Shown in pieces: positions 10,692-45,264 of a DNA stretch of 64,000 bases. Under the pieces are notes generated by a model. It worked only from the letters and a program-made list of their open reading frames with translations. It had not been told where the DNA came from and searched no databases. The stretch spans positions 1 through 64,000 of the IMG/VR virus record IMGVR_UViG_3300020473_000010. The stretch is one strand, 5' to 3'. Numbering within the stretch: position 1 is the stretch's first letter; every line of letters begins with the position of its first letter. Both the position numbers and the translations under genes were made by a program.

Positions 10692-10697
10692 ATATTT

Positions 10698-31508: not shown

Positions 31509-31679
31509 TTACTTGCCGGGCTTTATTTTATGAAGAGCAAGGCAGGAGTGGGGACTTATCAAGTCAACACGGATGCATGCTCTCTTATAAATACCATGGT
31601 TATTTCTTTTCCATGGAAAAAATGAGGCTGTCGAACGACGGATGTCGTATATTAAAGGGAAAAGAGGCGCGCGGCGTTT

Positions 31680-31916
31680 TTATTCTTCTTCTCGAGACTT
31701 GGCTGACCACTTAGATTTTGGTAGTTGTTTTTCTATTTTAAACTTGAGAATGGACTTTCCGTTTATTGTTGGATGTCCATATTTGTCTTTGCCGATTTTC
31801 TTTACGATGGTTCTTTTATTCTTAAATCTGCCGGTCAAAATCACATCTCCGACTTTCACGTCGAGAGGAATCGATTCCAAAAGTATCTGCCTTATGTATT
31901 GTCGTAAGTGTTTCAT
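31680..31916 (-). CDS. Leader-bearing small basic protein
   Basis: MKHLRQYIRQILLE + VKVGDVILTGRFKN (KOW-like cargo). Confidence 0.7.
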   Translation of the reverse strand: MKHLRQYIRQILLESIPLDVKVGDVILTGRFKNKRTIVKKIGKDKYGHPTINGKSILKFKIEKQLPKSKWSAKSREEE

Positions 31917-32614
31917 AATCTAAAACTCGCTTTATAAAGATTGTATTCTTTTCCTGTAGAATCATATATCTCATCGAAGACTTTAACCATATCGTCGTAG
32001 TTTTCATCCGGAACAATAACACCGATAGCTTCCCAGTTATCGACCAATGCTTCGTTACCTAAGAAGTCGTCAGGATCCCAATCTTCTCTACTAAGGACTA
32101 TACTCTCATCATCGACAACACCAATACCTTTATTTGCTCCGGAGCTTTTCACTCTTTCCGGATCAGCTTTTTTATAGAATTCTGAATATCCGGTTTGCAG
32201 GGCATCCATATCATTTGCTAGCAATGTTATGTAACCGTTAATTATGAGACCATATTTTCCAAACGCACTAGTTCCAGGCATTTCGCCTGGAAGATAAGCT
32301 GCAGCACTTAATTCATCTCGGGCTGATGGAGACTTAAGCATTTTAATTATTTTAGATAAATCTTTTGACCAATGCACTAACTCTAGAGTATCAATGAATT
32401 TTCTATCTGCATGTTTTGCAAAAGCTTTCTTCATTATTCGACCCATCGCCGCTCGATCTTTATAACCCTGTAATACTTTTTCATCTGGATCAGAGTCTTC
32501 ATCACTGATATCTCGAAATGTGTCATCATAATTCGGGTTGTTTAATAGATCTAGAACGAAAGATTCTCTGTCTTCTAGGAGTATTTGTCTTATATATTGT
32601 CGCAATCGTTTCAT
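31913..32614 (-). CDS. Leader-bearing protein, paralog family KHAD...VHW...ELS...NEALVDNW
   Basis: MKRLRQYIRQILLE; aligns by eye with 33849, 39199, 44413. Confidence 0.7.
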   Translation of the reverse strand: MKRLRQYIRQILLEDRESFVLDLLNNPNYDDTFRDISDEDSDPDEKVLQGYKDRAAMGRIMKKAFAKHADRKFIDTLELVHWSKDLSKIIKMLKSPSARDELSAAAYLPGEMPGTSAFGKYGLIINGYITLLANDMDALQTGYSEFYKKADPERVKSSGANKGIGVVDDESIVLSREDWDPDDFLGNEALVDNWEAIGVIVPDENYDDMVKVFDEIYDSTGKEYNLYKASFRL

Positions 32615-33201
32615 AACATTACCAGTTTGCCATCAACTTTGAGAGAATTTATGGTTGTGGGTTCTTTTGTATATCTTTTGCTTAGCGGGGAGTCCATCCA
32701 CCCACGTGGACCTTCATGATCCATAGGAGTTGATTGGTCGCAATTGTCTTCTTCTTCCGGGGTAAAATAATTATCAAAATCATCCAATTGCGATGATTTG
32801 ACATCGCTTCTGCGCTCCATATAATATCTCCAAACATACTCGGCTTCTTCAGAGACCGATTCTCTATCCGCAATTAAGCCATTCGCTATCTGTGTTGCAA
32901 ATTCAATTGCAATATCATAAAGCAGAGGTCCCCAACCATGGCCGGCGTTCGCCATTCCAACCTTCATTGCGCCGCCGCAAGGACCATAATCAGTATCCCT
33001 CCCGATTGTTATTCTTCCCATGGGAGCGCCTGAGGGCAACGTTACAATTTGATTGGGATTATCTTTGTATCCATAATATATCATATAATATGCTTCGTTT
33101 GTCTGTTTAATAACAACTACAAACTGATCCGGAAGATCATCTGTTGTCATCATTCCTTCTGTGAGGAGGACTTGTCTTATATATTGTCGTAGTTGTTTCA
33201 T
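32611..33201 (-). CDS. Leader-bearing GNAT-like protein
   Basis: MKQLRQYIRQVLLTE; GHGWGPLLY...DRESVSEEA.YVW. Confidence 0.55.
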   Translation of the reverse strand: MKQLRQYIRQVLLTEGMMTTDDLPDQFVVVIKQTNEAYYMIYYGYKDNPNQIVTLPSGAPMGRITIGRDTDYGPCGGAMKVGMANAGHGWGPLLYDIAIEFATQIANGLIADRESVSEEAEYVWRYYMERRSDVKSSQLDDFDNYFTPEEEDNCDQSTPMDHEGPRGWMDSPLSKRYTKEPTTINSLKVDGKLVML

Positions 33202-33213
33202 CAAGAATTCTCT

Positions 33214-33852
33214 TTAATATATGTATTCCGGTATTTTATTAAATGATAAACCTTGAGCCGTTCCTAATATCAATACTTCTGCCATACATTCATCTTCATC
33301 ACCGCCAACAATGTCAGATCCGCTCCAGTCTGGAAGTTCTTCAGCTAAATCTGGAACGTGAAAACCGTAATCTTCAAGCTCATCAAAAAGCAAATCAGGA
33401 ACGCCAATCTCTTCAAACTGTTCTTCTGTAAGATCACCCAGCATTCTAACGTCGTTGCCAAGCATGTATTTAACTATCTTTATAATATGTTGACGTGGAT
33501 AACATCGATCGTCATCCATCAGATCCCGGAAGAAGCCATATCCCTTATCAAAGAATTCTGACTTCTGGCCGAATTCATAAACCATTTCGTCTGCTAGCTC
33601 ATAGTCTCCCAGATATTCTCCAAGCTTCTCAAAGTAAAAACTCATTAAACCTTGCTTATCGACAAAACCTAGATCCGGACCATTCCATAATACGAGGATT
33701 CTAGAATAATTTGTGTGAGCCCATTCTAACATTTCCCCAATATCAAAAGGAGTATTACTTTCGTAAGCAGGTTGAATGTCAACAATGACCAGAGTATCTG
33801 AGCTAACGCCTTCTTTTAGTACTTGTCTTATGTATTGCTTTAATTGATTCAT
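33214..33852 (-). CDS. Leader-bearing isochorismatase/cysteine-hydrolase-like protein
   Basis: MNQLKQYIRQVLKE; LVIVDIQ, DKGYG, GGDEDEC (D-K-C triad spacing). Confidence 0.6.
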   Translation of the reverse strand: MNQLKQYIRQVLKEGVSSDTLVIVDIQPAYESNTPFDIGEMLEWAHTNYSRILVLWNGPDLGFVDKQGLMSFYFEKLGEYLGDYELADEMVYEFGQKSEFFDKGYGFFRDLMDDDRCYPRQHIIKIVKYMLGNDVRMLGDLTEEQFEEIGVPDLLFDELEDYGFHVPDLAEELPDWSGSDIVGGDEDECMAEVLILGTAQGLSFNKIPEYIY

Positions 33853-34979
33853 GGCCATTCTCCATTCGGAGGTGCTTTTAATAATAGATTTCCGTTTATA
33901 TCATATAAAGGAATATTCCAGTATTCTTGCGCTATAAATAACCGCTTCCATCTTAGCCCTAAGTGTTTCCCAGGCCGTTCTAGTTTTCCAACATTTTCTT
34001 TCACCCATTCATCTGTTATTATTAATCCGATAGGTTTCCAATTATCGACCAAGGCTTCATTAGTGGTTCGATTTGTTGGGTTAAAAGTTTTTGCATCTAG
34101 AATATAAGGAAATCTTTCTAAAAACCTTGGAGAATATTGGGATCGTTCCAATGCAAAATCAAAATTATACGGTGCTTTTCGTGGTACTTTGTTTATTCCA
34201 GAACTTCGTTTTCTTTGTTTTGCCTTTTCTAATTCTTCTTCTGAAAAATATTTTTCTTCACTACGGTATAAAGGAAAATAATCACCTCTATGGCCCGAGT
34301 GGATATGGTCCATATTATTTGCAGCATAAGTAATTTTCCCTTTTATCCAGAGTCCATAGCTTACACGTCGCGGTTTACTAAATGGATGACCTGGCGCCGA
34401 TATAGTTGCTGATAATTCATCTTTGTTTGTTACTGCCATTAAATATTTTAAATCATATTCATCACCTGTCCAATGGACTGTATTAAGCTTTTTTAAAAAT
34501 TCATGATCAGCATGTTTTGCGAACAATTGTTTAAGTTTTCTTCCGATCCACATTTCAGATTTAGGAAGAATTTCATCTTGTTTTGTAACTGGCAGTGTTC
34601 CTAATCTTTGGAGTTTAGCACCATCTTCAACAAAAGAATATGCATCCTCTAAAAGTATTTTCTTTATATATTTCCGCAATTTTTGTTCATTTGTTTGACT
34701 ATATTTTTCAGCCCACATTCTATCATTTTCTTCTTCTCGTCTGCGAAGTTCAGCTCTCCACTTTTCTATAGACCAGCCCGTAGGTTCTAAAAGTATATTG
34801 TAGTGTTGTCCCCATCCTCCATCCGGAAACAATCTTTCCCCTTCCTCGTCAACAAATTTGTTTACTGCATCTAAAGTCCATGGCAAGTCTTGGGATGGAA
34901 TGCTCATGCTTTTGGCCAACTCTATTGCTTGGATTATTCCTTCATAACCAGAGTTCATTAGTGATTTGAGGTTTTTCAT
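33849..34979 (-). CDS. Two-module protein: QDLPW module + internal leader + NEALVDNW family domain
   Basis: Internal QKLRKYIKKILLE. Confidence 0.65.
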   Translation of the reverse strand: MKNLKSLMNSGYEGIIQAIELAKSMSIPSQDLPWTLDAVNKFVDEEGERLFPDGGWGQHYNILLEPTGWSIEKWRAELRRREEENDRMWAEKYSQTNEQKLRKYIKKILLEDAYSFVEDGAKLQRLGTLPVTKQDEILPKSEMWIGRKLKQLFAKHADHEFLKKLNTVHWTGDEYDLKYLMAVTNKDELSATISAPGHPFSKPRRVSYGLWIKGKITYAANNMDHIHSGHRGDYFPLYRSEEKYFSEEELEKAKQRKRSSGINKVPRKAPYNFDFALERSQYSPRFLERFPYILDAKTFNPTNRTTNEALVDNWKPIGLIITDEWVKENVGKLERPGKHLGLRWKRLFIAQEYWNIPLYDINGNLLLKAPPNGEWP

Positions 34980-34981
34980 AG

Positions 34982-35437
34982 TTACACCAATATATTATTA
35001 AAAACTAAATCGCCAATAAATGTAGCCACAAACTCGTCAATATCTAAATATATTTGAACGCCACTGTACAGCATAATGCCATCGTCCTGAAGTTTGATGC
35101 CTTCATCATCAACCCAAACGGTCGCATAGCTTTCGTCACTAGATAAATCACCCCAGCTAAAAAAGAATTCTATTCTAGGTGTTTCTTCATATAGTTCCAT
35201 ATTGAAGTTTCCATCGGATCCGGTTGTTCGATTCATTATCGGTTGTATGCTTTTCTCGATTTTTTTTAATACTTCTAATTCTAAGTTTATATCTAACCCT
35301 AAAGACAGTGCAAGTTCTTTTGCATGCAGGAAATTATCATGGTGTCCGGCAGTTGCCATAGATTTAATCTTGGAAACATGATCTCCTGGAGTAGATTCTA
35401 AAACTAGTTTTCTTATATATCGCCGCAAGTGTTTCAT
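34982..35437 (-). CDS. Leader-bearing hypothetical protein
   Basis: MKHLRRYIRKLVLE. Confidence 0.65.
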   Translation of the reverse strand: MKHLRRYIRKLVLESTPGDHVSKIKSMATAGHHDNFLHAKELALSLGLDINLELEVLKKIEKSIQPIMNRTTGSDGNFNMELYEETPRIEFFFSWGDLSSDESYATVWVDDEGIKLQDDGIMLYSGVQIYLDIDEFVATFIGDLVFNNILV

Positions 35438-36219
35438 TACCAATTACCATCCTGTAATCTATCATAAGGGTCTATATTTACATATACTTCGAAGCTTTCT
35501 TCGTCAATACCGGTGATCTCTATATTTGATTTTTCCCAATTAAGAATTTGTTCAGCTTCATCGAAATCATCCTGATCCGGTGGAGTTATAGATGCATCAG
35601 CACCATGATTCATTTGGCCATCCTCGGGATCAATGGCCTGGAATCCGCCTTCAAGTCCAGCGAATGCTTGGTATTTTGGATCCATTGCTTGATCGTAGTT
35701 AAGTCCTTGTATGGCAACATCGCCGTGATATTCTGGGTTAGTACTTATGATGTTCCAAATTTTTAAGTCTGGATGTCTACTTACTTCCGGTCCTAACATG
35801 TACGCCAATTCACTTGCTTGTTCCCATTCGTCAGCATCAACAAGTTGCATTATCTTAGCAACTTCTTCTTTTGATTCTTTAATCAGTTGGCCTATGTATT
35901 GCCGCAAGTGTTCATCTAACCAACCACTTTTGGCCAATTGGTACTCAATCGACTTGGCTGCATCAGCTCTGTCGAATGCATGTTTGTATTCTTTCCAAGT
36001 CCAGCCTGTGGGTTCTAGAATCTGCTCGACTTCTTCGTCCCAGGACATCCCAGAAGATCTGCGACCGAAGACTGTCATATGATGGTAATCAACATACATG
36101 AGCACTAATTCTGCGGTCCATGGCAAGTCTTGGGTTGGGATACCCATATCTTCAGCTAATGTAATTGCCTGAATCATTCCTTTATATCCAGAATCCATTA
36201 ATGCTTCAAGTTGTTTCAT
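35437..36219 (-). CDS. Two-module protein: QDLPW module + internal leader + acidic domain
   Basis: N-terminal module paralogous to 33849; internal HLRQYIGQLIKE. Confidence 0.65.
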   Translation of the reverse strand: MKQLEALMDSGYKGMIQAITLAEDMGIPTQDLPWTAELVLMYVDYHHMTVFGRRSSGMSWDEEVEQILEPTGWTWKEYKHAFDRADAAKSIEYQLAKSGWLDEHLRQYIGQLIKESKEEVAKIMQLVDADEWEQASELAYMLGPEVSRHPDLKIWNIISTNPEYHGDVAIQGLNYDQAMDPKYQAFAGLEGGFQAIDPEDGQMNHGADASITPPDQDDFDEAEQILNWEKSNIEITGIDEESFEVYVNIDPYDRLQDGNW

Positions 36220-36755
36220 AAATCTCCTCCTACCCAGTCGATCCATTCCTGTTGTTTTTCTTCTGACAGGTCTTTAAACCAGTTGTTTGTAAAGTCCTTG
36301 TATGCATCTGATCTAAATTTTACCATCACCTTTGCTGATTCTTTTGGGTTGGGCATCCAATTTTCCCAGCCAGCCATATGAAAGATTTGCCACCCAGATA
36401 ATTCTTCAAGGACATAATCCAAGAGTTCGTGTTGTTTTAAGCCCGGGTGTGGGTTTACGCCTGTGTCGTCTTCTGCCTGCATTAACTTCTTTATATCGTC
36501 TCTAAGAGTAGTAAAGATGTCACCCAAAACACTGGCTGTTTCTTTATCTGGGTGATATTGTATTAGCTCGATTCCTTGGTTGGCACTTTGAAGGAATGTA
36601 AGGATAATCTTTTCTGCAAGCTCAAAGTTTTCTAAAGCTTCTTCGTCTTCTGGGTTCTGTGGTCCGTCTTGGATTTGAGGGCTTCCAGGTTCCCCAGGTG
36701 GAAGAACCACTTCTTCGGCCAAAAGTTTTCTTATGTATCTGCGCAAGTGTTTCAT
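36216..36755 (-). CDS. Leader-bearing hypothetical protein
   Basis: MKHLRRYIRKLLAEE. Confidence 0.65.
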   Translation of the reverse strand: MKHLRRYIRKLLAEEVVLPPGEPGSPQIQDGPQNPEDEEALENFELAEKIILTFLQSANQGIELIQYHPDKETASVLGDIFTTLRDDIKKLMQAEDDTGVNPHPGLKQHELLDYVLEELSGWQIFHMAGWENWMPNPKESAKVMVKFRSDAYKDFTNNWFKDLSEEKQQEWIDWVGGDL

Positions 36756-37153
36756 TATATAACTATCGCTACCTTTTCTGATAAAAATTCAGCAACTCCA
36801 TGGAGTTCGTCAAATAGCCGGTCGTATCCTCCACCTTCAACATTCCAACCACCAAAATAACTTTTTGTTATAGTGTATGTATCACCAGATCGAAGATCTG
36901 TTCTTTTAACTTTAATAGGTGCATCTGTCGACATGCCTATTTCATAAACATTACCTTCAATATCGATAAGCTTATCCCGCCCTTCAGATGACCAAAACGG
37001 CCTTTCTTGTTTTGCAAAACGGCGTTGCCAAGCTTTCTGGGTTTTCCTTGCTGGCAACGATCCAGGCCAGCCATTTCCACCCCAGCCATAAGTTGGCGTA
37101 GCTTGTTTCATTTCTTTTAAAACTTTTCTTATGTATCGTCTTAAATCTTTCAT
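36755..37153 (-). CDS. Leader-bearing hypothetical protein
   Basis: MKDLRRYIRKVLKE. Confidence 0.65.
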   Translation of the reverse strand: MKDLRRYIRKVLKEMKQATPTYGWGGNGWPGSLPARKTQKAWQRRFAKQERPFWSSEGRDKLIDIEGNVYEIGMSTDAPIKVKRTDLRSGDTYTITKSYFGGWNVEGGGYDRLFDELHGVAEFLSEKVAIVI

Positions 37154-37154
37154 A

Positions 37155-37946
37155 TCATAATCCTATAAAAATAACCATACCAGAAGAATTATAATCTCTT
37201 CCTAATGATTTCCAAACACGTTGCGCATCTTCAGAGGTGCCACCGCTGAAAGGGCTAGAACCACCACCCATTGTGCATGCATGGGCGCCAACAAAGACTC
37301 CGCCATATCTTTTTGAATATTCCACAGCTTGATCAATAAAAGCCTTATAAATCTCTTTGCCGTAACCTTTCCCTCTATTTTCAGGATTTGAAATCCAAGC
37401 ATTATTTACTTCATAGAATCTAGGCCTGAACTTTGCTGGTCTTTCTTTCATGCTATATCCATGGGGAGAATCCGGATCTTCAATCATATCTTTTGTTGTA
37501 TTGTTTGCTTCAAATTTTTCCTTGGCTGCAATATATTCTGGTGTTTGTTTTAAAATATCGACATCTGATTGACATTCTTTAAACCTTAGTTGTTCTCCAC
37601 CTTCTGCATATCCAATTCCGGATAACTCTACTCGAAAGTAATCTGGGCCTCCTTTGTGTATAAAATTTGATCTTTCCAAAAGATGTATTTTTGATTCTAT
37701 TTTTATACCATTTGCAAAATCATGATTTAATCCCCATAAGAAATTCTTCATTTCTTTATGTGAAACATTTCCTATAGCATCTTGGACGGCATCTACGACG
37801 GTATTGAGTTTTGGGTGTCTTAATTTTCTGGGGTTAACTTTCTCATTACCCCATTGGTTTGTATCGATATAATGACCAACCTTATCAAGGAATCCCATCT
37901 CTTTTTCTAACAAAATTTGTCTTATGTATTGACGTAAATACTTCAT
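37155..37946 (-). CDS. Leader-bearing GNAT acetyltransferase-like protein
   Basis: MKYLRQYIRQILLE; acetyl-CoA motif A PENRGKGYGKEIY; SEDAQRVW. Confidence 0.65.
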   Translation of the reverse strand: MKYLRQYIRQILLEKEMGFLDKVGHYIDTNQWGNEKVNPRKLRHPKLNTVVDAVQDAIGNVSHKEMKNFLWGLNHDFANGIKIESKIHLLERSNFIHKGGPDYFRVELSGIGYAEGGEQLRFKECQSDVDILKQTPEYIAAKEKFEANNTTKDMIEDPDSPHGYSMKERPAKFRPRFYEVNNAWISNPENRGKGYGKEIYKAFIDQAVEYSKRYGGVFVGAHACTMGGGSSPFSGGTSEDAQRVWKSLGRDYNSSGMVIFIGL

Positions 37947-38060
37947 TTTTTCACCAGGATTTGCAAGACCAATAACGGGCTTTATCTTTGGGCCCAGGAT
38001 TATCACAATTGTGACGAGCTCTGAAAGATTTTCTTGCTTTAGGGTTTGATTTTCTTATTT

Positions 38061-38459
38061 TCATATTTGGGTCACCAAATTGAACTTTTTTGCTTTGTTT
38101 TGTCCTTTGCATGATCCGGATTTATATTTACCATCGCCAGAAACATATACTTTTGATTTTTTGTTTTTGTTCTCAGGGTTAGACATTTTTTTATTTAATG
38201 TTACTTTTCTACCATCATAGCATGCTTCAAGGATTCGGCTTATTAATATCCGTAATTTAGATTCATTTAATTCGTCAACCTTCTCTTCTGATTCGTCTAA
38301 TTCTGATATTTTCTCACAATTGTTTACTCTTTTTCCTGTTTTTGAAGAGATTTTAGTTTTCTTGCCCGACTTGGCTCCTGGGGAATAACCATCCCAACAT
38401 TTTTTTTCGTTGAGAGATTCGCGAATGATTTGTTTGAGTTGTCTTTTTGTAATTTTCAT
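38061..38459 (-). CDS. Leader-bearing basic protein
   Basis: MKITKRQLKQIIRE; KCWDGY...NNCEK; internal LRILISRILE. Confidence 0.65.
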   Translation of the reverse strand: MKITKRQLKQIIRESLNEKKCWDGYSPGAKSGKKTKISSKTGKRVNNCEKISELDESEEKVDELNESKLRILISRILEACYDGRKVTLNKKMSNPENKNKKSKVYVSGDGKYKSGSCKGQNKAKKFNLVTQI

Positions 38460-38682
38460 TGGATACACCTGAGGGTTTTTTTATTATTAATAATTATTTC
38501 TTCTTTTTTAAGTTCCCTATTTATTATTTTATATTTTCTATTTCCGATTTGTTCTTTTTGTTTCAGTATTAACAAATCGTTTCTTTGTTTTTTTATTAAG
38601 GTGCTTTTATTATATAAATTTTCGCAATGTTGATGATTAAAATTAACACAAGATGAAAAACAAACAATGATAAATAACGTTA

Positions 38683-39186
38683 TTAACATTTCTTTTTAAG
38701 GTTTTTGATTCCATCTGGATGCCAAATGCACCCTGATGCAACATCCCAACTATAATACCAAAAATGTCTTTGGCGTTTTGAAGGAAGGTATGGGCATATT
38801 TCTATTCCTGCATATTTTTTCGAAACCAAGTTCCAATCGATTACTAACTCAAATTTTCCTTTTCTTCCATATTCAGTTTCAAATTGGTCAAATTCTGAAT
38901 CATTAGTAATAAATAATATTTTCTCTTCATTGAGAAATACTTCGTAAACAGAATCATATCCTCTGTGACTATAGCCTCCAAGTTCAATATTACAAAATTC
39001 TTGCCATACATTTCCGCAGTCATACCATAAGCCTGTGGGTTTTTTAGGGCCTATTTGATCAGATGCCGATGGTTGTGATTGTGGCTGCAACAATTTTAAG
39101 ATTTCATCGTCTCGAGAATGATGAAGTCTTTGAACTTGGATTCCTTCCAACAAAACGGTTCTTATATATTGTCTTAATTGTTTCAT
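38683..39186 (-). CDS. Leader-bearing conserved phage protein
   Basis: MKQLRQYIRTVLLE; KPTGLWY...YAGIEI...WDVASGCIW. Confidence 0.65.
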   Translation of the reverse strand: MKQLRQYIRTVLLEGIQVQRLHHSRDDEILKLLQPQSQPSASDQIGPKKPTGLWYDCGNVWQEFCNIELGGYSHRGYDSVYEVFLNEEKILFITNDSEFDQFETEYGRKGKFELVIDWNLVSKKYAGIEICPYLPSKRQRHFWYYSWDVASGCIWHPDGIKNLKKKC

Positions 39187-39198
39187 AAACTTTTCTCT

Positions 39199-40317
39199 TT
39201 AATATCTTTCTTTTTTGAAGATGTTAAGAAGAAATTTAACATCATTTTTATTTTGGGGATTAATAACTTTTTGAGAATTGTCTCCCATATAACTGTTTTC
39301 TAAAAGATATATTGGTTTTTTAATAGATCCATCTTTTAAAGCTTTTTCGAAAAAGTTTTTTGCTCTATAGACATCAGCAATATACCATGCTGAAATTTTC
39401 CAGTTATCTAATATTACCTCTTCTAAACCTGTAGCTTCTCGATCTTTAATATCTTTTTCGTTTAGAGCAACTGCATTAGCTCTTATCTTAAAATAATTTT
39501 CTATTTCTTTTGTAGATTTTCCTTTTCTTTCCATTTTGCGTTTTATCCATTTTTTCTTTTTTTCTGGAAATTTTGTACTAGATACTGCTGTCATAGCCGC
39601 TCTTTTAGGAAGGCCTGAAGATTTATAATATTCTCTTGCTTTATCTGAGGCCATTCTTTGGGTTTGACTAGCTAAATCTGTAAAAGCTGCAAATATTGGC
39701 CAACCCTCAATTAAAAATCCCCACCCTTTAGACATCATAGATTGGCTTCCCACAAGAGGGTTTCCAGACGGGGTATACGTAGCTGAAACGGAAATCGCGT
39801 TTTTTTGTGGGGTTTCTTGAGCTTCAATCCATTGTGATTTTAAAGGTTTGGTGATTTTAATCCCGAAAGATCCCATTGCTCGGGCGGCGGATTTATAGGT
39901 AACATCATGAGTATATGTCATTTTATTAGATTTGAAGAAATCTATATCAGCTTTTTCTTGCCATAATCTCATCATCGCTCGTTCAATATCAATTTCTTTT
40001 AAAGTTTGTCCGTGTTTTACTCTTCTTTCAGATGGGTGTCGATTATCGTAATGTTCCGGATTTTCATCGGTATAAGGAGGCTTTTTTTCATCTTTTGTTA
40101 CTTGATAAATCACTTCTATATCGCGCCAATCTTGTTCATGTTCTTGGGTTTCTTCGTTCCAGTAATATCCATAATGAGGTTCTATAGATGTTTCAGTAGG
40201 AATATTTTCTTGGACAGAAACCCAGTCACCCCAAAGGTCTTCAGCTGCTGATAGAAATTCAGGATCTGTAGTTTCTTTTAAGAGTAAAAACCTTATATAT
40301 TCTCTCAAAACTTTCAT
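39199..40317 (-). CDS. Leader-bearing protein, EEVILDNW family
   Basis: MKVLREYIRFLLLKE; family motifs. Confidence 0.65.
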   Translation of the reverse strand: MKVLREYIRFLLLKETTDPEFLSAAEDLWGDWVSVQENIPTETSIEPHYGYYWNEETQEHEQDWRDIEVIYQVTKDEKKPPYTDENPEHYDNRHPSERRVKHGQTLKEIDIERAMMRLWQEKADIDFFKSNKMTYTHDVTYKSAARAMGSFGIKITKPLKSQWIEAQETPQKNAISVSATYTPSGNPLVGSQSMMSKGWGFLIEGWPIFAAFTDLASQTQRMASDKAREYYKSSGLPKRAAMTAVSSTKFPEKKKKWIKRKMERKGKSTKEIENYFKIRANAVALNEKDIKDREATGLEEVILDNWKISAWYIADVYRAKNFFEKALKDGSIKKPIYLLENSYMGDNSQKVINPQNKNDVKFLLNIFKKERY

Positions 40318-41502
40318 TTAGTTTCTTCCTTGAAAAAAATCTCTAACAGCCCAATGAGGTCCTTCATAATCTTCAGCAAAAGATTCTGGATCTAACCCTA
40401 ATTCACTTGCATATTCTAAAAATTCATTATGATTATCCATCATTGCATAGAAGTCTGAATCTGCATAATCTGTATTATAAGAAACATTTAGATCTGCTGC
40501 AACGTTTTCGCTTGGCGGGTAATCATCATATAAGTCGGCTTCACTATTTATTTTATGGTCATACCATTCTTCTCTTAAAGTTTGAATAATATCTTCATAT
40601 GGTTCACCATAATCTTCTTCTATTTCTTCTTCGTTATCTGCCATATATCCTTCTAGATCATTTAAGATCTCATCTGGATCTAGAGTTTCCCATTCTCCAT
40701 TATCCATTACTTTTCCAAATTCATGCCATTCTTGGTAGTTGTTAATAAACCAATCCATAAATAATTGTTTCATTGCGTTTTTTATTCCATCAGATGCTCT
40801 TTGTCCCTGAAGTAAACAATCATCATCTTCAAATTCTGTTATTTGAATATCTTCGTCATCTAAATATCTTTTATCAATATCATTACGAGCTGTTGCGTAT
40901 TTATTCCAAACATGGCGGGCTGATGAGGAAACAGAAGATCTATCTGAAGTTAATCCCTCTGGAGCAATAGACATTATCATGTCATATAAGGTTGGTCCTA
41001 AGCCATCATCTGCGGCGGATCTTATAACTTCCCAAGCACCGTTGCAGTTCCCGTATCTTCCCGGGGTTCTTATTCGCATCACAGCTTTTGTTGTTTCAGT
41101 AATTGCAGAAGAGATAAGATCTGATGATGCTTCAAATAATTCGGATTCTAAATCTGTATCAGCATCTATATCTTTTTCTATAAAACGTGCGTCGGTTTCT
41201 AATATTTGTTTTGCAAGTTGAGCATCATAAAGAACAAAATCTATTTCAGTTGATTCCGGAATTTCCATTCCTTCTCCATAAAACGTTGTCCAAATAGCAA
41301 ATTTTGAGGAAACAGAGGATGGATTTATCATTGCTTCAAATAAAATTTTGTGAATATATATTCGTAAATTTTCTATTTGAAGATCTTTAGAATTTAATGG
41401 TACTTCTTTTTCTCCAACTTCATCAAAAGTCATATCAAACGGATTTTCTTTAATAGCCACTTTCAGTCTCCAGTTCCCATGGTCCCCAATGTTCAGTTTC
41501 AT
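40318..41502 (-). CDS. GNAT-like protein with internal leader and acidic tail
   Basis: IENLRIYIHKILFE; DGLGPTLY...DRSSVSSSARHVW; paralogous to 32611. Confidence 0.55.
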   Translation of the reverse strand: MKLNIGDHGNWRLKVAIKENPFDMTFDEVGEKEVPLNSKDLQIENLRIYIHKILFEAMINPSSVSSKFAIWTTFYGEGMEIPESTEIDFVLYDAQLAKQILETDARFIEKDIDADTDLESELFEASSDLISSAITETTKAVMRIRTPGRYGNCNGAWEVIRSAADDGLGPTLYDMIMSIAPEGLTSDRSSVSSSARHVWNKYATARNDIDKRYLDDEDIQITEFEDDDCLLQGQRASDGIKNAMKQLFMDWFINNYQEWHEFGKVMDNGEWETLDPDEILNDLEGYMADNEEEIEEDYGEPYEDIIQTLREEWYDHKINSEADLYDDYPPSENVAADLNVSYNTDYADSDFYAMMDNHNEFLEYASELGLDPESFAEDYEGPHWAVRDFFQGRN

Positions 41503-41821
41503 TTATCCAATGTAACAGGTCATCATAACTATATTCATAAACCTGTGGTTGTCTTTCTTTCCAGCCATCTTTGCTCTCAACAAATGTTTGCTCAATTTTA
41601 CCTAAAGTATAATATAAAAATTTAGGGTATACGATATTTCTCCCATTGGAATAATCGTGTACCATATCTGAAGCTTTGTGAATTAAGAAAGCATGCCCAA
41701 AAGGTGTGCTTTCTAATTCACCTTGCCCAATAACTTCAGCATGGACAAGAATCCATTCACCAGATCGGCCATGGTCCATCATATATTTTCCAGCTATTTC
41801 ATAGCAATCTCCAAGCATCAA
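41450..41821 (-). CDS. Small Cys/His protein, possible transglutaminase/papain-like fold
   Basis: GDCYEIA...LVHA...GHAF. Confidence 0.5.
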   Translation of the reverse strand: MMLGDCYEIAGKYMMDHGRSGEWILVHAEVIGQGELESTPFGHAFLIHKASDMVHDYSNGRNIVYPKFLYYTLGKIEQTFVESKDGWKERQPQVYEYSYDDLLHWINETEHWGPWELETESGY

Positions 41822-42363
41822 ATATCTTCCTCTGTTAATACCTGCCTAATATATCTCCGGAGATTTTCCATAGCCGGTTCTCTTGTTTTCAACCACCCTG
41901 CTTTTCCTGAACCTCTTGGAGGCGATGATAGAAATTTATATGTTTCTTCATCTGTTATCCACAAAAGTTCCGGATGGTCTTTTGTGTTAAGGTGATTGTT
42001 AAAATTATCAGAAGCTACTGACATTTCCCCATCCCCTCTTTGATCTTTTGCCAACATTATAAGATCGTCTAATCTTCCCCAATTTTTATCTTTTGTCATA
42101 TCATATTTGCTAGCAAATCTTTTATACAATTCAGGACTATGTTTATCTTTTCCAAATATTTGAATCAATCTGTTTTTAATGTCTTCTATTTCTATTTCCG
42201 GAATAGCTGAAGCTTGTTCTATTTCAGTATTTTTCTTTCGTTTCTCTGCTTGGGTCTGGTGCTTTTTATCAATTTCAGCATCAAAGTCTTCTATTTCTTT
42301 TTCAGCAGCTTTTTTTGCAGCATCTAAATCTTCAAAAATAATGTGTTTAAGGTATTTTCTCAT
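41818..42363 (-). CDS. Hypothetical protein with N- and C-terminal leader-like helices
   Basis: MRKYLKHIIFE ... ENLRRYIRQVLTEE. Confidence 0.6.
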   Translation of the reverse strand: MRKYLKHIIFEDLDAAKKAAEKEIEDFDAEIDKKHQTQAEKRKKNTEIEQASAIPEIEIEDIKNRLIQIFGKDKHSPELYKRFASKYDMTKDKNWGRLDDLIMLAKDQRGDGEMSVASDNFNNHLNTKDHPELLWITDEETYKFLSSPPRGSGKAGWLKTREPAMENLRRYIRQVLTEEDI

Positions 42364-43107
42364 TTATTCTTCATCCCTATATTCTAAAGGCCAGTCTTGA
42401 TCAGGCCAGCGAGTCATAAGATAGAATTGGTATACTTCTCGTATCCGATTCATAAAAGAGACCATCTCTTCTTGAGTGTATCCGAAATGGAGACCTGTAG
42501 CATAAATATTGTTTAATTCTCTATCTATTAAATCTGCAGCGGGAATTCCTTCTCTTTTTGACTGTAAAACCCAATCAGCTACATGGGCTGGAGTTTCAGA
42601 TTGGTTAATATAGTATTTTTCAGCATTCTCTAGTGATATCCAAATATCTTCTTCGGACTTAATGGTTTCCCTAACACTCATAAGGTGTTCAGTTGGTTGC
42701 CCAGAATGTTCTAATTCATGGCGAATACTTCCTTCATATTTTATTTCAAAACGCTTAAGCTCTTCTTCTGTATAGTCGGACGGCATTTTAAGATATATAA
42801 TTAAATCGGAATTTTTCCTTTGTTCGTCTGTAGCATCTAAATCAAATTCATAAGCAGCGTGAGTATTAAAAGTATTTGAATCTTCTACAGAAACTATAAT
42901 ATCTCTCAGCCAAATAAGTTTTTTCGGTTTTTCGAAATCAATTCGAAATTTAATTGACTTTCTTTGTACAAATGCCTGCTTAAGACCGTTATCAAGTAAA
43001 GCGCTGGTGATTTCCTTTGCAATTTTTTTTGCGGCTCTTTCTAAATTTCTTCCAGAAAGAGATTTTTCTAATAATAAAGTTTTTATATATTTTCTAAGGA
43101 GTTCCAT
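42364..43107 (-). CDS. Leader-bearing HExxH protein
   Basis: MELLRKYIKTLLLE; IRHELEHSGQ. Confidence 0.65.
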   Translation of the reverse strand: MELLRKYIKTLLLEKSLSGRNLERAAKKIAKEITSALLDNGLKQAFVQRKSIKFRIDFEKPKKLIWLRDIIVSVEDSNTFNTHAAYEFDLDATDEQRKNSDLIIYLKMPSDYTEEELKRFEIKYEGSIRHELEHSGQPTEHLMSVRETIKSEEDIWISLENAEKYYINQSETPAHVADWVLQSKREGIPAADLIDRELNNIYATGLHFGYTQEEMVSFMNRIREVYQFYLMTRWPDQDWPLEYRDEE

Positions 43108-43663
43108 GTCTTTCTCTCAATATCTCGTGTAGTTCTTTCATATGTTCTTTTTTGATATAACCCGGGATATAAACGTTTTTCAAAGCAGAAGAATATTTTA
43201 TAATCTGTTTAGGTGAAGGAGAATGAGAAAGATTATGGATTAAATCCGAAATTTTTACTATTCCAGATAAAGGGTTATTTAAAGTAGCTTGAAGATATTC
43301 CGGATAAGGAATTGATTTTTCGTGAGTTAAAAGCATTAATGCATCAAGTAGTTGGCTTAAAATCTCTTCATCATGTATTGAAGATTTTATCATATTAAAG
43401 GCTTCTTGTTTAGATACATTTCCAACTTTTTCTGCGTCTTCCAAGGAATCATGAAGCAGAGCTAACATTTGGGCCGGCTTATTATTTGGATAATATTTTT
43501 TCGTAATATTATAAACCCCTAATGGATGAGAAAAACCTGTTGTTCCATCTCTTCTCGTTTGCCCTAAATGTACTAATTCTGCTGTTTGTCTAACATCTTC
43601 AAGGTCTTGACGAGAAAGATATTCTTTTAATAAGGTTTTTATATATTTTCGCAAAAATGTCAT
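43094..43663 (-). CDS. Leader-bearing RelA/SpoT-type HD hydrolase (Mesh1/SAH-like)
   Basis: H.GQTRRDG...HP, ALLHDSLED, LLTH, VKISDLIHNL. Confidence 0.85.
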   Translation of the reverse strand: MTFLRKYIKTLLKEYLSRQDLEDVRQTAELVHLGQTRRDGTTGFSHPLGVYNITKKYYPNNKPAQMLALLHDSLEDAEKVGNVSKQEAFNMIKSSIHDEEILSQLLDALMLLTHEKSIPYPEYLQATLNNPLSGIVKISDLIHNLSHSPSPKQIIKYSSALKNVYIPGYIKKEHMKELHEILRERHGTP

Positions 43664-43678
43664 GATTATAACCCAGTT

Positions 43679-44416
43679 TTATAATAAAAATGTTTCCATA
43701 TTGGATCTTATAGATTCTATATTTTCTTGAAAATCTTCAAAAGACGACGAATTATCAACAAAAAAGAACGAATTTCCAAACAAAAGTTTATATGGTTCAA
43801 GGTTCTTATCCACAGAATCCCAGCTACGAGCCGCAGCGTCTGAATGGATTCTTCTTTTTCCTTTTTCACCTCTTTGCCAGTTTCTTTCAATGGAAGTTGT
43901 TTTTGGTACAGAAATATAAATCATTCCCGTATCATATCCCATATGCTTATAAACCGTATTTAACTTTGATATTTCTTTATAATTTCCCCCTGTGCCATCA
44001 ATAATAAAATCAATTCCTTGTGAACTTAATTCACTAGCTTTTTCTTTTGCTAATTTTCTAGCTCTAGCAAATAATTTCATATTTTCAGACATTGTTGGCC
44101 TTAGAGCTTCTCTTTCTGATTGAAGTTCAGTAACATCTAAACCCTCTGCTTTTCCTGCTTTTATAGCACTCATAATGTCGAAATACTTTTGGGTAAATGT
44201 ATGGATATCTAAAGAAATTCCTGCTTCTTCTAAAAACGGTTCATACCAATCGTCGGGATTTACAATTTCAAATTGGTTGATTAACCCGAGTTGTTTTAAA
44301 ACCGTGGATTTTCCTGCACCAGGTGCGCCGGCCATGAAAATAACTTTTCTTCCAGGAGAAATATCTCCAGCCATTTCCAAAATTAAATTTCTTATATATT
44401 TTCTGAGAGTAATCAT
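43679..44416 (-). CDS. Leader-bearing zeta-toxin-like P-loop kinase
   Basis: FMAGAPGAGKST, VNPDD, IIDGTG, SIERN..R. Confidence 0.8.
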   Translation of the reverse strand: MITLRKYIRNLILEMAGDISPGRKVIFMAGAPGAGKSTVLKQLGLINQFEIVNPDDWYEPFLEEAGISLDIHTFTQKYFDIMSAIKAGKAEGLDVTELQSEREALRPTMSENMKLFARARKLAKEKASELSSQGIDFIIDGTGGNYKEISKLNTVYKHMGYDTGMIYISVPKTTSIERNWQRGEKGKRRIHSDAAARSWDSVDKNLEPYKLLFGNSFFFVDNSSSFEDFQENIESIRSNMETFLL

Positions 44417-45264
44417 AGTTTTTGGAATTTCCTTTTAAGTTTTTTAATATCTTTGTCTGTGTATGTATATTCCTCGAAGTCTTCATCAACTACTTTGATG
44501 CCTTTTGCATTGAGCGCTAATACTTCTTGATGTATATCTTCAAACGGATTATATGGCCAAATTAAAGTATTCCATCGCCAATTATCGACAATCACTTCTT
44601 CTATATAAAATTGATTATATTTCCCTAAAACGGAAAGGACATCTTGTTGATCAAATAAAACCCCTTCTCCTGAAGTGTTACTCAATCCGGGTCGTTTTGG
44701 CAAACCAGATCCTTGATGACGTTGTAAATCCTTTGCTGATGCAGACCCTCGAGATTCCGAAAAAGCATCTGTAAGACCTGCCCAGGTGATTCTTCCTGAG
44801 AGGATAATACCTTTACCTTTTATGTTATAACTACTTTCTAGTATTCCATAACAAGACATTTCATCTTTATGGACTTTGTTTGGCTTGTACTTTTCAATAA
44901 AAGCAGAAACAGAAAGATCTATTTCGCCTCTTGATACATCTCCACCCATTAAATTATAATAATTTAAACTATGTACGCACTTTACTGTTTTCCAATAATC
45001 ATGGTCTGCATGTTTATTCCAGAAACCTTTCATTTCTCTTTTAAGGTTAATATATTCTGTTGCTTTCTTTTTTCCTAGTTTCTTTGTGAGTTCATCATGG
45101 TGCCAGGTACCGACACTCATGTTATCTCCGGAATCTGGATCTGGATCTTCGGGAACTGTTGTCATTTCTCCTTCTTGTCGATTCCACCTGAATTCACTAA
45201 ATGCATCTTGAAGTTCTGGAGACTCAAGTAAAAGCGCTCGAATATATTTCCGTAAGTATTTCAT
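44413..45264 (-). CDS. Leader-bearing protein, EEVIVDNW family
   Basis: MKYLRKYIRALLLE; family motifs. Confidence 0.65.
   Translation of the reverse strand: MKYLRKYIRALLLESPELQDAFSEFRWNRQEGEMTTVPEDPDPDSGDNMSVGTWHHDELTKKLGKKKATEYINLKREMKGFWNKHADHDYWKTVKCVHSLNYYNLMGGDVSRGEIDLSVSAFIEKYKPNKVHKDEMSCYGILESSYNIKGKGIILSGRITWAGLTDAFSESRGSASAKDLQRHQGSGLPKRPGLSNTSGEGVLFDQQDVLSVLGKYNQFYIEEVIVDNWRWNTLIWPYNPFEDIHQEVLALNAKGIKVVDEDFEEYTYTDKDIKKLKRKFQKL

What the first reader, a model, noticed from the sequence alone, without database searches (positions are those of the whole stretch)
31913..45264. Four-member paralog family among the leader cargoes with ADP-ribosyltransferase-like motif spacing
Seen: 31913, 33849, 39199 and 44413 share (K/E)(H/K)AD..F...(V/T)H(W/D/S), (E/A)(L/I/M)S, G....G and (N/E)E(A/V)(L/I)(V/L)DNW. 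Known: ART folds use a beta1 His/Arg, a beta2 Ser/Tyr and a beta5 Glu, and T4 Alt is a head-packaged, injected ART. Inference: these may be diversified virion-delivered ARTs or NADases. The fold call comes from motif order only. ORFs 38683 and 14449 show weaker similar spacing.
Basis: inference. Interest (0 to 1): 0.65.

Follow-up and report, generated by a model that had tools for sequence, protein, structure and literature searches.

The report
Phage-packaged ADP-ribosyltransferase-like paralog family
Four related genes in an uncultured 289-kb marine T4-like phage encode an unnamed protein family whose predicted structure is an ADP-ribosyltransferase fold, with invariant His, Ser and Glu in the order and strand positions of the catalytic slots, each behind a short leader that probably loads the protein into the phage head for injection into the host.

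Summary
The four minus-strand ORFs (31913, 33849, 39199, 44413) are real paralogs: BLASTP gives 5e-28, 6e-9 and 2e-9. A core HMM finds exactly these four in the 288.7-kb genome. ORFs 38683 and 14449 are not members.

No Pfam, PHROG or NCBIfam model matches them, and no GenBank phage carries a homolog. An exhaustive profile search still finds 642 cluster representatives; those with a stated source are marine metagenomes.

AlphaFold models of two paralogs (pLDDT 91.8 and 88.7) match only ADP-ribosyltransferase folds at the top: CteC (Z 6.4-6.8), SopF, DarT and the Tpt1 NAD lobe. The conserved His falls on CteC R65 and DarT H13, if beta1 aligns without gaps. His, Ser and Glu sit on beta1, beta2 and beta5 and are kept in 98-100% of 244 sequences. 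That is an H-S-E triad, as in DarT1.

The genome encodes a T4-type prohead protease and capsid protein. The 14-residue leader (MKxLRxYIRxxLLE) occurs on 13 clustered ORFs of several unrelated families. Its final Glu is kept in 217 of 218 sequences. Another phage uses a different leader on the same kind of gene cluster.

Best reading: a new ART-fold family delivered like T4 Alt and the internal proteins. Enzyme activity, target and packaging are untested.

The parts
31913..32614 (-). Paralog 1 (P0001, 233 aa). After the inferred cleavage it would be about 24.7 kDa with pI 4.5. Conserved residues: H81, S103, G122, G127, S158-G159-K162, E188, D192-N193-W194.
31916..32392 (-). ART-fold core of P0001 (residues 75-233): beta1 78-83, beta2 102-107, beta3/4 121-133, a 54-residue insertion at 134-187 in the ARTT-loop position, then beta5/6 188-201.
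   Evidence: Model pLDDT 91.8. CteC Z 6.4-6.8 over 141-142 residues, DarT Z 5.7-5.8, Tpt1 NAD lobe Z 5.5.
32573..32614 (-). Leader of P0001 (residues 1-14, MKRLRQYIRQILLE). Putative capsid-targeting and protease-cleavage module.
33849..34979 (-). Paralog 2 (P0002, 376 aa): a 97-residue N-terminal extension, an internal leader and the ART-like domain. Conserved residues: H169, S190, E308.
   Evidence: Independent contigs cover it without indels.
34647..34688 (-). Internal leader of P0002 (residues 98-111, ending LLE). It has no Met, so the protein looks like a polyprotein.
39199..40317 (-). Paralog 3 (P0003, 372 aa). Conserved residues: H137, S176, S234-G235-K238, E300. It has an extra N-terminal beta-hairpin domain (41-72) and an 83-residue basic insertion (217-299, pI 10.1).
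39256..39930 (-). ART-fold core of P0003 (residues 130-354).
   Evidence: Model pLDDT 88.7. CteC Z 5.6 over 167 residues; the next five hits are DarT x3, Tpt1 and SopF.
40273..40317 (-). Leader of P0003 (residues 1-15, MKVLREYIRFLLLKE).
44413..45264 (-). Paralog 4 (P0004, 283 aa). Conserved residues: H98, S137, S186-G187-K190, E223. It is the most divergent member, on a long branch.
45223..45264 (-). Leader of P0004 (residues 1-14, MKYLRKYIRALLLE).

Best explanation
The four genes encode diverged members of a previously unnamed family of the ADP-ribosyltransferase (ART) fold superfamily, with an H-S-E catalytic triad.

Inferred mechanism, step by step:
1. The proteins are made during head assembly.
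2. The N-terminal 14-residue amphipathic leader (MKxLRxYIRxxLLE) docks them on the scaffolding core of a T4-type prohead.
3. The T4 gp21-type prohead protease (genome 178317-178931) cuts after the leader's final Glu.
4. The mature 25-42 kDa enzymes stay in the head and enter the host with the DNA.
5. There they use host NAD+ to ADP-ribosylate host targets.

The four differ most in the insertion at the ARTT-loop position (54-87 residues, pI 4.1-10.1). In CteC, an insertion domain (F157-R194) recruits the substrate; equivalence of position with the insertion here is inferred from topology, not from a residue-level alignment. They therefore probably act on different targets.

Shown here: paralogy, family-wide residue conservation, the ART fold, the register of the His, the presence of a T4-type protease and capsid protein, and that the leader is portable and differs between phages.

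Inferred: NAD use, transfer activity, targets, packaging, cleavage and injection.
For: Paralogy.

Fold:
- P0001 model, pLDDT 91.8. In a search of 48,161 PDB representatives, all seven hits with Z>=4.5 are ART folds, and by my reading of the entry titles so are all ten with Z>=3.0. They include CteC Z 6.4 (142 aa, 3.6 A), SopF 6.0, DarT 5.8, Tpt1 NAD lobe 5.5, further DarTs, Scabin, TreX and Tre1. CteC reaches Z 6.8 on a second look.
- The ESM Atlas also returns halovibrin HvnA, TM 0.46.
- The independent P0003 model, pLDDT 88.7, gives the same six proteins as its top six hits.

Register:
- CteC alignment 75..233 vs 59..272 puts H81 on R65, assuming no gap in beta1. The P0003 alignment 130.. 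vs 58.. puts H137 on R65.
- Thermus DarT alignment 72.. vs 4.. puts H81 on H13.
- R65 and E220 are catalytic in CteC (PMC10810742). H13 binds the adenosine ribose in DarT (PMC9967889).
- DarT1 naturally has Ser in the Tyr slot, so it is H-S-E (PMC11543638).
- H81 ends beta1, S103 starts beta2 and E188 starts beta5.

Conservation in 244 sequences (non-gap counts): H 235/238, S 237/243, E 238/238, G127 244/244, SG..K about 98%.

Delivery:
- The genome has Peptidase_S77 (2.2e-26) and Gp23 (7.9e-64).
- The leader's final Glu is kept in 217 of 218 sequences.
- T4 IPII and IPIII begin MKTYQEFIAE. The first ten residues target IPIII into the head, and gp21 cuts after Glu (PMC9026906, PMC3012670).
- 13 ORFs of several unrelated families share the leader. 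All lie at 31.7-45.3 kb of a 288.7-kb genome.
- In another phage (L004), the family member and six neighbouring ORFs share a different leader, MKITRRQLRxxIxxE.
- Many homologs are fusions with the leader placed internally between two domains.
Against: - Structural Z scores (5.6-6.8) lie below the level (about 8) that the tool's own notes call safe. Foldseek's best E is only 0.03, and Foldseek found no ART for P0003.
- No sequence profile links the family to any known ART. Pfam, PHROGs and NCBIfam give nothing, a PDB profile search gives nothing, hhalign against T4 Alt gives 0.3%, and the DarT HMM has no hit.
- Model coordinates are not exposed, so the 3D proximity of H, S and E and the NAD pocket were not measured. 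The register rests on aligned ranges.
- There is no canonical ExE/QxE motif, and no second aromatic residue was identified.
- No virion proteome, no RNA evidence and no enrichment of T4-type late promoters.
- No macrodomain, ARH or NADAR gene in the genome.
Confidence: 0.5

Rival explanations
1. These are ART-fold enzymes that act on nucleic acids rather than proteins. They would ADP-ribosylate DNA or RNA bases or ends as DarT does, or work in an RNA-end repair or modification kit as Tpt1 does. They would be co-delivered with kinase, phosphatase and CCA-adding enzymes.
For: - Half of the best structural matches act on nucleic acids: DarT1/DarT2, Tpt1, Scabin and pierisin.
- The H-S-E triad equals that of DarT1 (PMC11543638).
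- The insertions of P0002 and P0003 are strongly basic, pI 9.5 and 10.1. The P0003 insertion weakly resembles small DNA-binding helical domains.
- Fusion partners and neighbours include HAD_SAK_1 (an RNA-repair HAD), an AAA_33/Zeta (PNK-like) kinase and a PolyA_pol/CCA head domain.
Against: - The fusions carry an internal leader. They may therefore only reflect co-packaging of unrelated cargo, not a shared pathway.
- CteC and SopF, which modify proteins, score highest.
- The Tpt1 RNA lobe and its R-H-R-R tetrad are absent, and Tpt1 lacks the catalytic Glu that is invariant here.
- P0001 and its insertion are acidic, pI 4.5 and 4.1.
Confidence: 0.2
2. These are active ART-fold or NAD-consuming enzymes that are not packaged. 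On this reading the shared leader is an N-terminal helix with another role, such as membrane or complex association, or co-regulation. The proteins would act inside the infected cell, as T4 ModA and ModB do.
For: There is no direct evidence of packaging. No T4 late-promoter enrichment was found. The leader is predicted as part of a longer helix (residues 2-24) that continues into the fold.
Against: - The leader's terminal Glu is invariant (217/218). The hydrophobic-x-Glu ending fits cleavage by T4-type proteases, and such a protease is encoded.
- The leader is portable across several unrelated families and differs between the two phages compared.
- Its internal position between domains in fusions looks like a processing site.
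- Positions 1, 2, 7 and 8 match the T4 IPIII targeting sequence (PMC9026906).
Confidence: 0.15
3. These are NAD+ glycohydrolases (NADases) rather than transferases. Once injected they would lower host NAD+, or destroy NAD-derived signals.
For: The ART fold with a catalytic Glu supports NAD hydrolysis in many toxins. Halovibrin, described as an ADP-ribosyltransferase (background knowledge), is among the structural neighbours.
Against: Four paralogs that differ mainly in the substrate-side insertion fit target diversification better than hydrolysis does. Depleting NAD+ at the start of infection would hurt a phage that encodes many nucleotide-metabolism genes.
Confidence: 0.08
4. These are non-catalytic internal head proteins, with structural, DNA-condensing or inhibitor roles like T4 IPI-III, that merely derive from an ART fold. 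Alternatively, the ART resemblance is a chance similarity of topology.
For: Z scores are under 8 and no sequence link to ARTs exists. T4 internal proteins include non-enzymes (PMC3012670).
Against: Polar residues His, Ser, Glu and Ser-Gly..Lys are kept at about 98-100% across sequences that share only 17-25% identity. That pattern indicates an active site. Two separate models give the same exclusive ART hit list.
Confidence: 0.07

Closest known systems
T4 Alt (head-packaged, injected mono-ADP-ribosyltransferase)
   Same: A phage ART carried in a T4-type head. Alt is about 40 copies per head, is trimmed by the gp21 protease after Glu, is ejected with the DNA and modifies host RNA polymerase (PMC9026906). 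Here there is a T4-type protease and capsid protein in the genome, and a leader ending in Glu.
   Different: - No detectable sequence relationship (hhalign probability 0.3%).
- Alt belongs to the R-S-E class (background knowledge); this family is H-S-E.
- Alt is 682 aa and a single gene. These are 233-376 aa, in four paralogs.
- Their leader resembles the IPII/IPIII targeting sequence rather than Alt's N-terminus.
T4 internal proteins IPI/IPII/IPIII and their capsid targeting sequence
   Same: A short N-terminal leader (T4: MKTYQEFIAE) shared by otherwise unrelated, fast-evolving cargo proteins and removed by the prohead protease after Glu (PMC9026906, PMC3012670). Here the leader is MKxLRxYIRxxLLE. 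It has the same Met-Lys start, an aromatic-Ile pair at positions 7-8 and a terminal Glu, and it sits on 13 clustered ORFs.
   Different: - The leader is 14 residues, not 10.
- The cargoes are larger and mostly enzyme-like: ART-like, GNAT-like and Zeta/PNK-like kinase.
- Some cargoes are polyprotein-like, with internal leaders.
- Packaging is not demonstrated.
DarT1/DarT2 (DNA ADP-ribosyltransferase toxins of DarTG)
   Same: ART fold, Z 4.5-5.8 over about 125 residues. The beta1 His aligns with DarT H13, with an H-x-[ST] context (HWS/HWT here, H-I-T in DarT). DarT1 has the same H-S-E triad (PMC11543638).
   Different: - No match to the DarT Pfam model.
- No DarG/NADAR or macrodomain partner.
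- A different insertion that carries the SSGxxK motif.
- An N-terminal helical hairpin and a leader.
CteC (Chromobacterium ubiquitin-Thr66 mono-ART)
   Same: The best structural match: Z 6.4-6.8 over 141-142 residues for P0001 and Z 5.6 over 167 residues for P0003. Both CteC and this family carry an insertion domain before beta5; in CteC it recruits the substrate (PMC10810742).
   Different: CteC is R-S-E (R65, S97, E220) and a type III secretion effector acting on eukaryotic ubiquitin. Identity is only 7-13%, and the insertion domains are unrelated.
Tpt1/KptA RNA 2'-phosphotransferase
   Same: The NAD-binding lobe matches at Z 5.5 over 103 residues. Some family members are fused to RNA-repair-type domains.
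   Different: Only the NAD lobe matches. No PTS_2-RNA Pfam hit. Tpt1's RNA lobe and Arg-His-Arg-Arg tetrad are absent. Tpt1 has no catalytic Glu, which is invariant here.

Membership tests
ADP-ribosyltransferase fold superfamily | Split beta-sheet ART core (beta1-beta2 ... beta3/4 ... beta5/6) | tested here: met
   Two AlphaFold models (pLDDT 91.8 and 88.7) have only ART folds as top VIA matches: CteC Z 6.4-6.8 and 5.6, plus DarT, SopF and Tpt1. The Z scores are moderate.
ADP-ribosyltransferase fold superfamily | Catalytic triad in order: beta1 His/Arg, beta2 Ser/Tyr, beta5 Glu | tested here: met
   H81 ends beta1, S103 starts beta2 and E188 starts beta5. Assuming no gap in beta1, H81 and H137 map to CteC R65, and H81 maps to DarT H13, by aligned ranges. 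Conserved at 98-100% in 244 sequences.
ADP-ribosyltransferase fold superfamily | The three residues line one NAD+ cleft in 3D | not testable with these tools
   Model coordinates are not exposed, so no distances or ligand docking could be computed.
ADP-ribosyltransferase fold superfamily | NAD+ binding and ADP-ribosyl transfer or NAD hydrolysis | not testable with these tools
   Needs biochemistry.
ADP-ribosyltransferase fold superfamily | Sequence-profile match to a curated ART family | tested here: not met
   No ART model matched in Pfam at E<=1, PHROGs, NCBIfam or the PDB profile search.
T4 Alt/ModA/ModB-type phage ARTs (R-S-E) | Sequence homology to Alt | tested here: not met
   hhalign of the family profile against T4 Alt: probability 0.3%.
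T4 Alt/ModA/ModB-type phage ARTs (R-S-E) | Arg on beta1 and an ExE/QxE motif on beta5 | tested here: not met
   His is invariant in the beta1 slot. The beta5 context is N-E-A or E-E-V, with no E/Q two residues upstream.
DarT (PF14487) | Match to the DarT profile | tested here: not met
   No hit in the genome even at E<=10, and none in the Pfam scan.
DarT (PF14487) | Cognate DarG macrodomain or NADAR antitoxin | tested here: not met
   No Macro, ARH or NADAR family match in the 288.7-kb genome.
Tpt1/KptA | Two-lobe enzyme with an N-terminal RNA lobe and a PTS_2-RNA profile match | tested here: not met
   No Pfam hit. The structural match covers only the NAD lobe, chain residues 101-230. The N-terminus here is a helical hairpin.
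T4-type capsid-targeted internal proteins | Short N-terminal leader ending in hydrophobic-x-Glu, shared by unrelated proteins | tested here: met
   13 ORFs carry it. The terminal Glu is kept in 217/218 sequences. It resembles T4 IPII/IPIII MKTYQEFIAE. A different leader type is shared within another phage's cluster.
T4-type capsid-targeted internal proteins | T4-type prohead protease and gp23-type capsid protein in the same genome | tested here: met
   Peptidase_S77 2.2e-26 and Gp23 7.9e-64. The capsid protein N-terminus has LLE and LRE sites.
T4-type capsid-targeted internal proteins | Presence in virions, with the leader removed | not testable with these tools
   The phage is uncultured and no proteome is available. 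No RNA runs hold the sequence.

The most novel reading that the evidence does not exclude
The 31.7-45.3 kb array is an injected effector arsenal. It holds a dozen or more proteins, partly made as polyproteins that the prohead protease cuts at internal leaders. They carry enzyme folds typical of bacterial toxins: four H-S-E ART-like enzymes, two GNAT-like proteins and a Zeta/PNK-like kinase. The ART-like family would be a new clade that modifies host nucleic acids or the translation machinery within seconds of DNA entry. This system appears widespread in uncultured marine T4-like jumbo phages, and each lineage may use its own leader 'address code'.
Probability: 0.25. Interest if true: 0.8.

Novelty: new variant of a known kind. 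Interest (0 to 1): 0.62.

Why it matters
T4 Alt and the small internal proteins are the textbook case of proteins that a phage injects with its DNA. Little is known about such cargo outside coliphages.

The evidence here points to a large family that no database names: 642 cluster representatives at 50% identity. It has an ART fold and an H-S-E triad. It occurs in up to four diverged copies per genome in marine T4-like jumbo phages. It sits behind a leader that differs between the two phages compared and is also attached to other toxin-like enzymes.

If the inference holds, three things follow:
- A new ART clade with unknown, probably several, host targets.
- A simple sequence rule (leader plus terminal Glu) for predicting virion-delivered effectors in metagenomic phage genomes.
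- Natural examples of polyprotein cargo processed inside the capsid.

The leader could also serve as a packaging tag in engineered relatives.

Tried and rejected
- Sequence-family scans of the four proteins (Pfam at E<=1, PHROGs, NCBIfam): no meaningful hit.
- Profile search against PDB sequences: only a chance hit at E 0.38.
- megablast of the region, and tblastn of P0002, P0004 and the consensus-like member P0117, against 50,697 GenBank phages: nothing.
- ESM Atlas feature search for P0001: no usable hit.
- Foldseek against PDB: only sub-threshold ART hits for P0001 (best E 0.03) and no ART hits for P0003. Foldseek against BFVD: uncharacterised giant-virus proteins only.
- ORFs 38683 and 14449 as extra members: rejected.
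- T4 late promoter TATAAATA: 6 matches against 7.7 expected, so no signal. The sigma-70 and terminator scan was at chance level apart from one good hairpin at 45898-45918.
- Homology to T4 Alt: rejected. DarT HMM: no hit.
- Reversal or immunity enzymes (Macro, ARH, NADAR): none.
- A fixed gene pair of GNAT-like plus ART-like genes: rejected. The two families are often neighbours, but in variable order and number. No complex prediction was run.
- A reading of the domain fusions (HAD_SAK_1, Zeta kinase, CCA head) as functional linkage was weakened once the internal leaders were seen.
- The search for related loci with the full alignment failed because it had no conserved 7-10-column stretch. It worked with the short-clade alignment.
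- A literature search for Swiss-Army-Knife RNA repair with KptA found nothing.
- The careful maximum-likelihood tree did not finish, so the quick tree is reported.

Full report
CONTEXT

The window is the first 64 kb of a single-contig virus record of 288,697 bp. CheckV estimates it 96% complete. GC content is about 36%.

The genome encodes a T4-type prohead protease (Peptidase_S77, 2.2e-26, at 178317-178931) and a gp23-type major capsid protein (7.9e-64). The closest cultured capsid protein, at 43.5% identity, is from a Flavobacterium phage. Microcystis, Rhodothermus and metagenomic 'huge' phages follow.

Near-identical DNA occurs in five marine metagenome runs from two studies. Contigs from three samples other than the likely sources cover 31600-36000 (P0001 and P0002) with no indels and only two adjacent substitutions in one contig. 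This is an uncultured marine T4-like jumbo phage.

THE OBSERVATION

All four ORFs exist at the stated coordinates on the minus strand. They are tightly packed, with overlapping or abutting stop and start codons relative to their neighbours.

Pairwise BLASTP gives 5e-28 (P0001/P0002), 6e-9 (P0001/P0004) and 2e-9 (P0003/P0004). P0001 and P0003 are linked only through the others.

An HMM of the family core, with the leader removed, retrieves exactly these four among 710 ORFs of the whole genome. The next hit has E 0.27.

There is also an unlisted, strictly conserved SSGxxK motif.

The two 'weaker' candidates fail. ORF 38683-39186 shares only the leader, and ORF 14449-15201 shares nothing.

THE FAMILY ELSEWHERE

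- No Pfam, PHROG or NCBIfam model matches the four proteins.
- No GenBank phage holds a homolog by tblastn.
- The word-indexed search found 112 homologs. All are unnamed or 'hypothetical'; the sources named include TARA and other metagenome collections. Contigs reach 186 kb.
- The exhaustive profile search found 642 cluster representatives at E<=1e-3, of which 463 are at E<=1e-10.
- IMG/VR loci show one to four copies per 20 kb, in contigs of up to 293 kb.
- On a quick maximum-likelihood tree, the four window copies fall in four separate places within two deep groups. P0001 and P0002 have the NEALVDNW/SSGANKG signature. P0003 and P0004 have EEVIxDNW/SSGLPKR. Three of the four have closer relatives in other contigs than in this genome, so the paralogy is old rather than a recent local expansion; P0004 sits alone on a long branch, so its placement is unsure.
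- Across 244 sequences, the non-gap conservation is: His 235/238, Ser 237/243, Glu 238/238, second Gly 244/244, Ser-Gly..Lys about 98%. Overall identity in the 56-sequence alignment falls as low as 16-25%.

FOLD

With a 56-sequence alignment, AlphaFold2 models P0001 at mean pLDDT 91.8 and pTM 0.87.

A Foldseek-independent comparison with 48,161 PDB representatives returns only ART folds at the top:
- CteC: Z 6.4, 142 residues, 3.6 A
- SopF: Z 6.0
- Thermus DarT: Z 5.8
- Yeast Tpt1 NAD lobe: Z 5.5
- Three more DarTs: Z 4.5-4.8
- Scabin, TreX and Tre1: Z 3.0-3.3

Re-alignment of Foldseek's candidates gives CteC Z 6.8. Foldseek's own best hits are also CteC, but below threshold at E 0.03. The ESM Atlas shape search includes halovibrin, described as an ADP-ribosyltransferase (background knowledge), at TM 0.46.

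P0003 is the most different paralog in length and sequence. Modelled separately, it reaches pLDDT 88.7 and gives the same six proteins as its six best hits (CteC Z 5.6 over 167 residues).

The tool's notes warn that Z under 8 can reflect a common arrangement. The argument here rests on the hit list being exclusive to ARTs and reproducible, not on any single score.

ACTIVE-SITE REGISTER

In the P0001 model, H81 ends beta1 (78-83), S103 begins beta2 (102-107) and E188 begins beta5 (188-). This is the canonical order of the ART triad.

- The CteC alignment (75..233 vs 59..272) puts H81 on R65, if beta1 aligns without gaps. The P0003 alignment (130.. vs 58..) puts H137 on R65.
- The Thermus DarT alignment (72.. 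vs 4..) puts H81 on H13.
- R65 and E220 are essential in CteC (PMC10810742). H13 binds the adenosine ribose, and the next residue's backbone binds nicotinamide, in DarT (PMC9967889).
- The local context H-W-[ST] parallels DarT's H-I-T.
- DarT1 has Ser in the Tyr slot (PMC11543638), so an H-S-E triad has precedent.

Coordinates of the models are not available to me, so I could not measure 3D distances or the NAD cleft.

The segment between beta4 and beta5 is where ARTs carry the substrate-determining ARTT loop. CteC carries its ubiquitin-recruiting insertion domain at F157-R194, between S97 and E220 (PMC10810742); I infer from topology, not from a residue-level alignment, that this is the equivalent position. 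That segment is the most variable part of the four paralogs: 54, 87, 83 and 54 residues, with pI 4.1, 9.5, 10.1 and 6.5. It also holds the conserved SSGxxK motif.

THE LEADER AND DELIVERY

Thirteen ORFs, all on the minus strand at 31.7-45.3 kb, carry MKxLRxYIRxxLLE or a close variant. The only other regex matches in 288.7 kb are three doubtful ones (30634, 115401, 247887), none ending in hydrophobic-x-Glu. Eleven carry it at the N-terminus.

P0002 and the 394-aa ORF 40318-41502 carry it internally.

The leader-bearing ORFs include:
- the four ART-like proteins;
- two GNAT-like paralogs (3e-13 to each other; the Atlas leads point to Acetyltransf_1);
- a Zeta-toxin/AAA_33 P-loop kinase;
- several proteins without any match.

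The leader's last Glu is kept in 217 of 218 family sequences.

T4 IPII and IPIII begin MKTYQEFIAE. The first ten residues suffice to target IPIII to the prohead core. Residues 4 and 7 matter for targeting, and residues 8 and 10 for cleavage by gp21, which cuts after Glu. Alt is likewise packaged, trimmed and ejected (PMC9026906, PMC3012670).

The leader here shares Met-Lys at positions 1-2, an aromatic-Ile pair at 7-8 and a terminal hydrophobic-x-Glu. The capsid protein's N-terminal region contains LLE and LRE sites.

The most telling test comes from a different phage contig (L004, 186 kb). There the family member starts MKLSRRQLRKLIQE, and six neighbouring ORFs start with the same MK/RITRRQLRxxIxxE type. 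The leader follows the phage, not the cargo.

Many homologs are fusions of the form [other domain]-[leader without Met]-[ART-like domain]. The other domains include HAD_SAK_1, a Zeta/AAA_33 kinase, a PolyA_pol head and DUF192. That is what one expects if the leader is also an internal processing site.

None of this proves packaging. No proteome or RNA evidence exists, and T4-type late promoters are not enriched.

INTERPRETATION

Best reading, confidence about 0.5 for the whole chain: a new H-S-E family of the ART fold, loaded into the head through a capsid-targeting leader, trimmed after Glu, injected, and acting on several host targets.

My separate estimates:
- ART fold: about 0.85.
- An NAD-using active enzyme: about 0.65.
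- Packaging through the leader: about 0.65-0.7.

Rivals:
- Nucleic-acid-directed activity (DarT-like or Tpt1-like). Basic insertions, an RNA-repair-type co-cargo and the DarT1-type triad favour it.
- Unpackaged intracellular enzymes.
- NADases.
- Non-catalytic internal proteins.

MEMBERSHIP AND NOVELTY

The family is not a sequence member of the following:
- Alt: hhalign probability 0.3%.
- DarT: no profile hit and no DarG/NADAR partner.
- Tpt1: only the NAD lobe matches.

It works like Alt in its presumed delivery, and like DarT1 in its triad. I rate it a new variant of a known kind: a new ART-fold family inside a known concept, phage-injected enzymes with a targeting leader.

Noticed in passing
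window 31680-45264, minus strand: An array of 13 ORFs carries the MKxLRxYIRxxLLE leader. The motif starts at 31907, 32605, 33192, 34679, 35428, 37937, 39177, 40308, 41367, 42363, 43098, 44407 and 45255. The only other regex matches in the 288.7-kb genome are three doubtful ones (30634, 115401, 247887), none ending in hydrophobic-x-Glu. The leader DNA averages 58% identity between copies, up to 78%.
   Followed up: partly
window 32611-33204 and 40318-41502, minus strand: A second paralog family among the leader cargoes (BLASTP 3e-13), with the shared motif YG.C.GA..V...A..G.GP.LYD. ESM Atlas leads point to GNAT acetyltransferases (feature score 0.92-0.93, structure TM 0.62). The first ORF has the leader at its N-terminus (MKQLRQYIRQVLLTE); the second has it internally at about residues 45-57. 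This family is present in 13 of 25 related IMG/VR loci, with nine copies in L006. It often sits next to ART-like genes, but in no fixed order.
   Followed up: partly
window 43679-44416 and 43094-43663, minus strand: Immediately downstream of paralog 4 (4-nt overlap) lies a leader-bearing P-loop kinase (Pfam Zeta_toxin 4.9e-14, AAA_33 5.4e-14; PHROG polynucleotide kinase 5e-8). After it comes an HD-type metal-dependent phosphohydrolase (phrog_990, 6e-20) without a clear leader. A homolog elsewhere (P0177) fuses such a kinase to the ART-like domain.
   Followed up: partly
window 33849-34979 (P0002); proteins P0175, P0177, P0195, P0205 and locus L022:9257-10786: Polyprotein-like architecture: an N-terminal domain, then an internal leader without Met, then the ART-like domain. 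The N-terminal part is an unknown 97-aa stretch in P0002. Elsewhere it is HAD_SAK_1, a Zeta kinase, DUF192 or a PolyA_pol head. This suggests processing at internal leader sites.
   Followed up: partly
L004:7817-13723: In a different 186-kb phage contig, seven adjacent ORFs, including the ART-family member at 10001-11143, share another leader type (MKITRRQLRxxIxxE). The leader type may be lineage-specific.
   Followed up: partly
window 45264-45824, minus strand: A thioredoxin/AhpC-like ORF (Pfam 4e-8) lies directly upstream of paralog 4 and shares its stop/start junction. It has no leader. A good terminator-like hairpin at 45898-45918 (minus strand) lies just upstream of it and may mark the start of this transcription unit.
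   Followed up: no
window 3-355; 12568-13590; 21898-22911; 48757-49575: Auxiliary genes typical of large phages: a tmRNA with tag ANNNYFYDSERLAA, a GMP reductase/IMPDH-family gene (1.4e-76), adenylosuccinate synthetase (2.2e-80) and a PolyA_pol/CCA-adding head domain (3.4e-18).
   Followed up: no
protein P0142 (409 aa, family homolog from the profile search): Its C-terminal extension gives a weak hit to Pfam ART-PolyVal (E 0.0014, below the cut-off). This could be a second, unrelated ART module fused to a family member.
   Followed up: no
window 38683-39186, minus strand: A leader-bearing 167-aa ORF matches phrog_8582 (unknown function, 4e-14). This is the only leader cargo, besides the kinase, with a PHROG family.
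   Followed up: no
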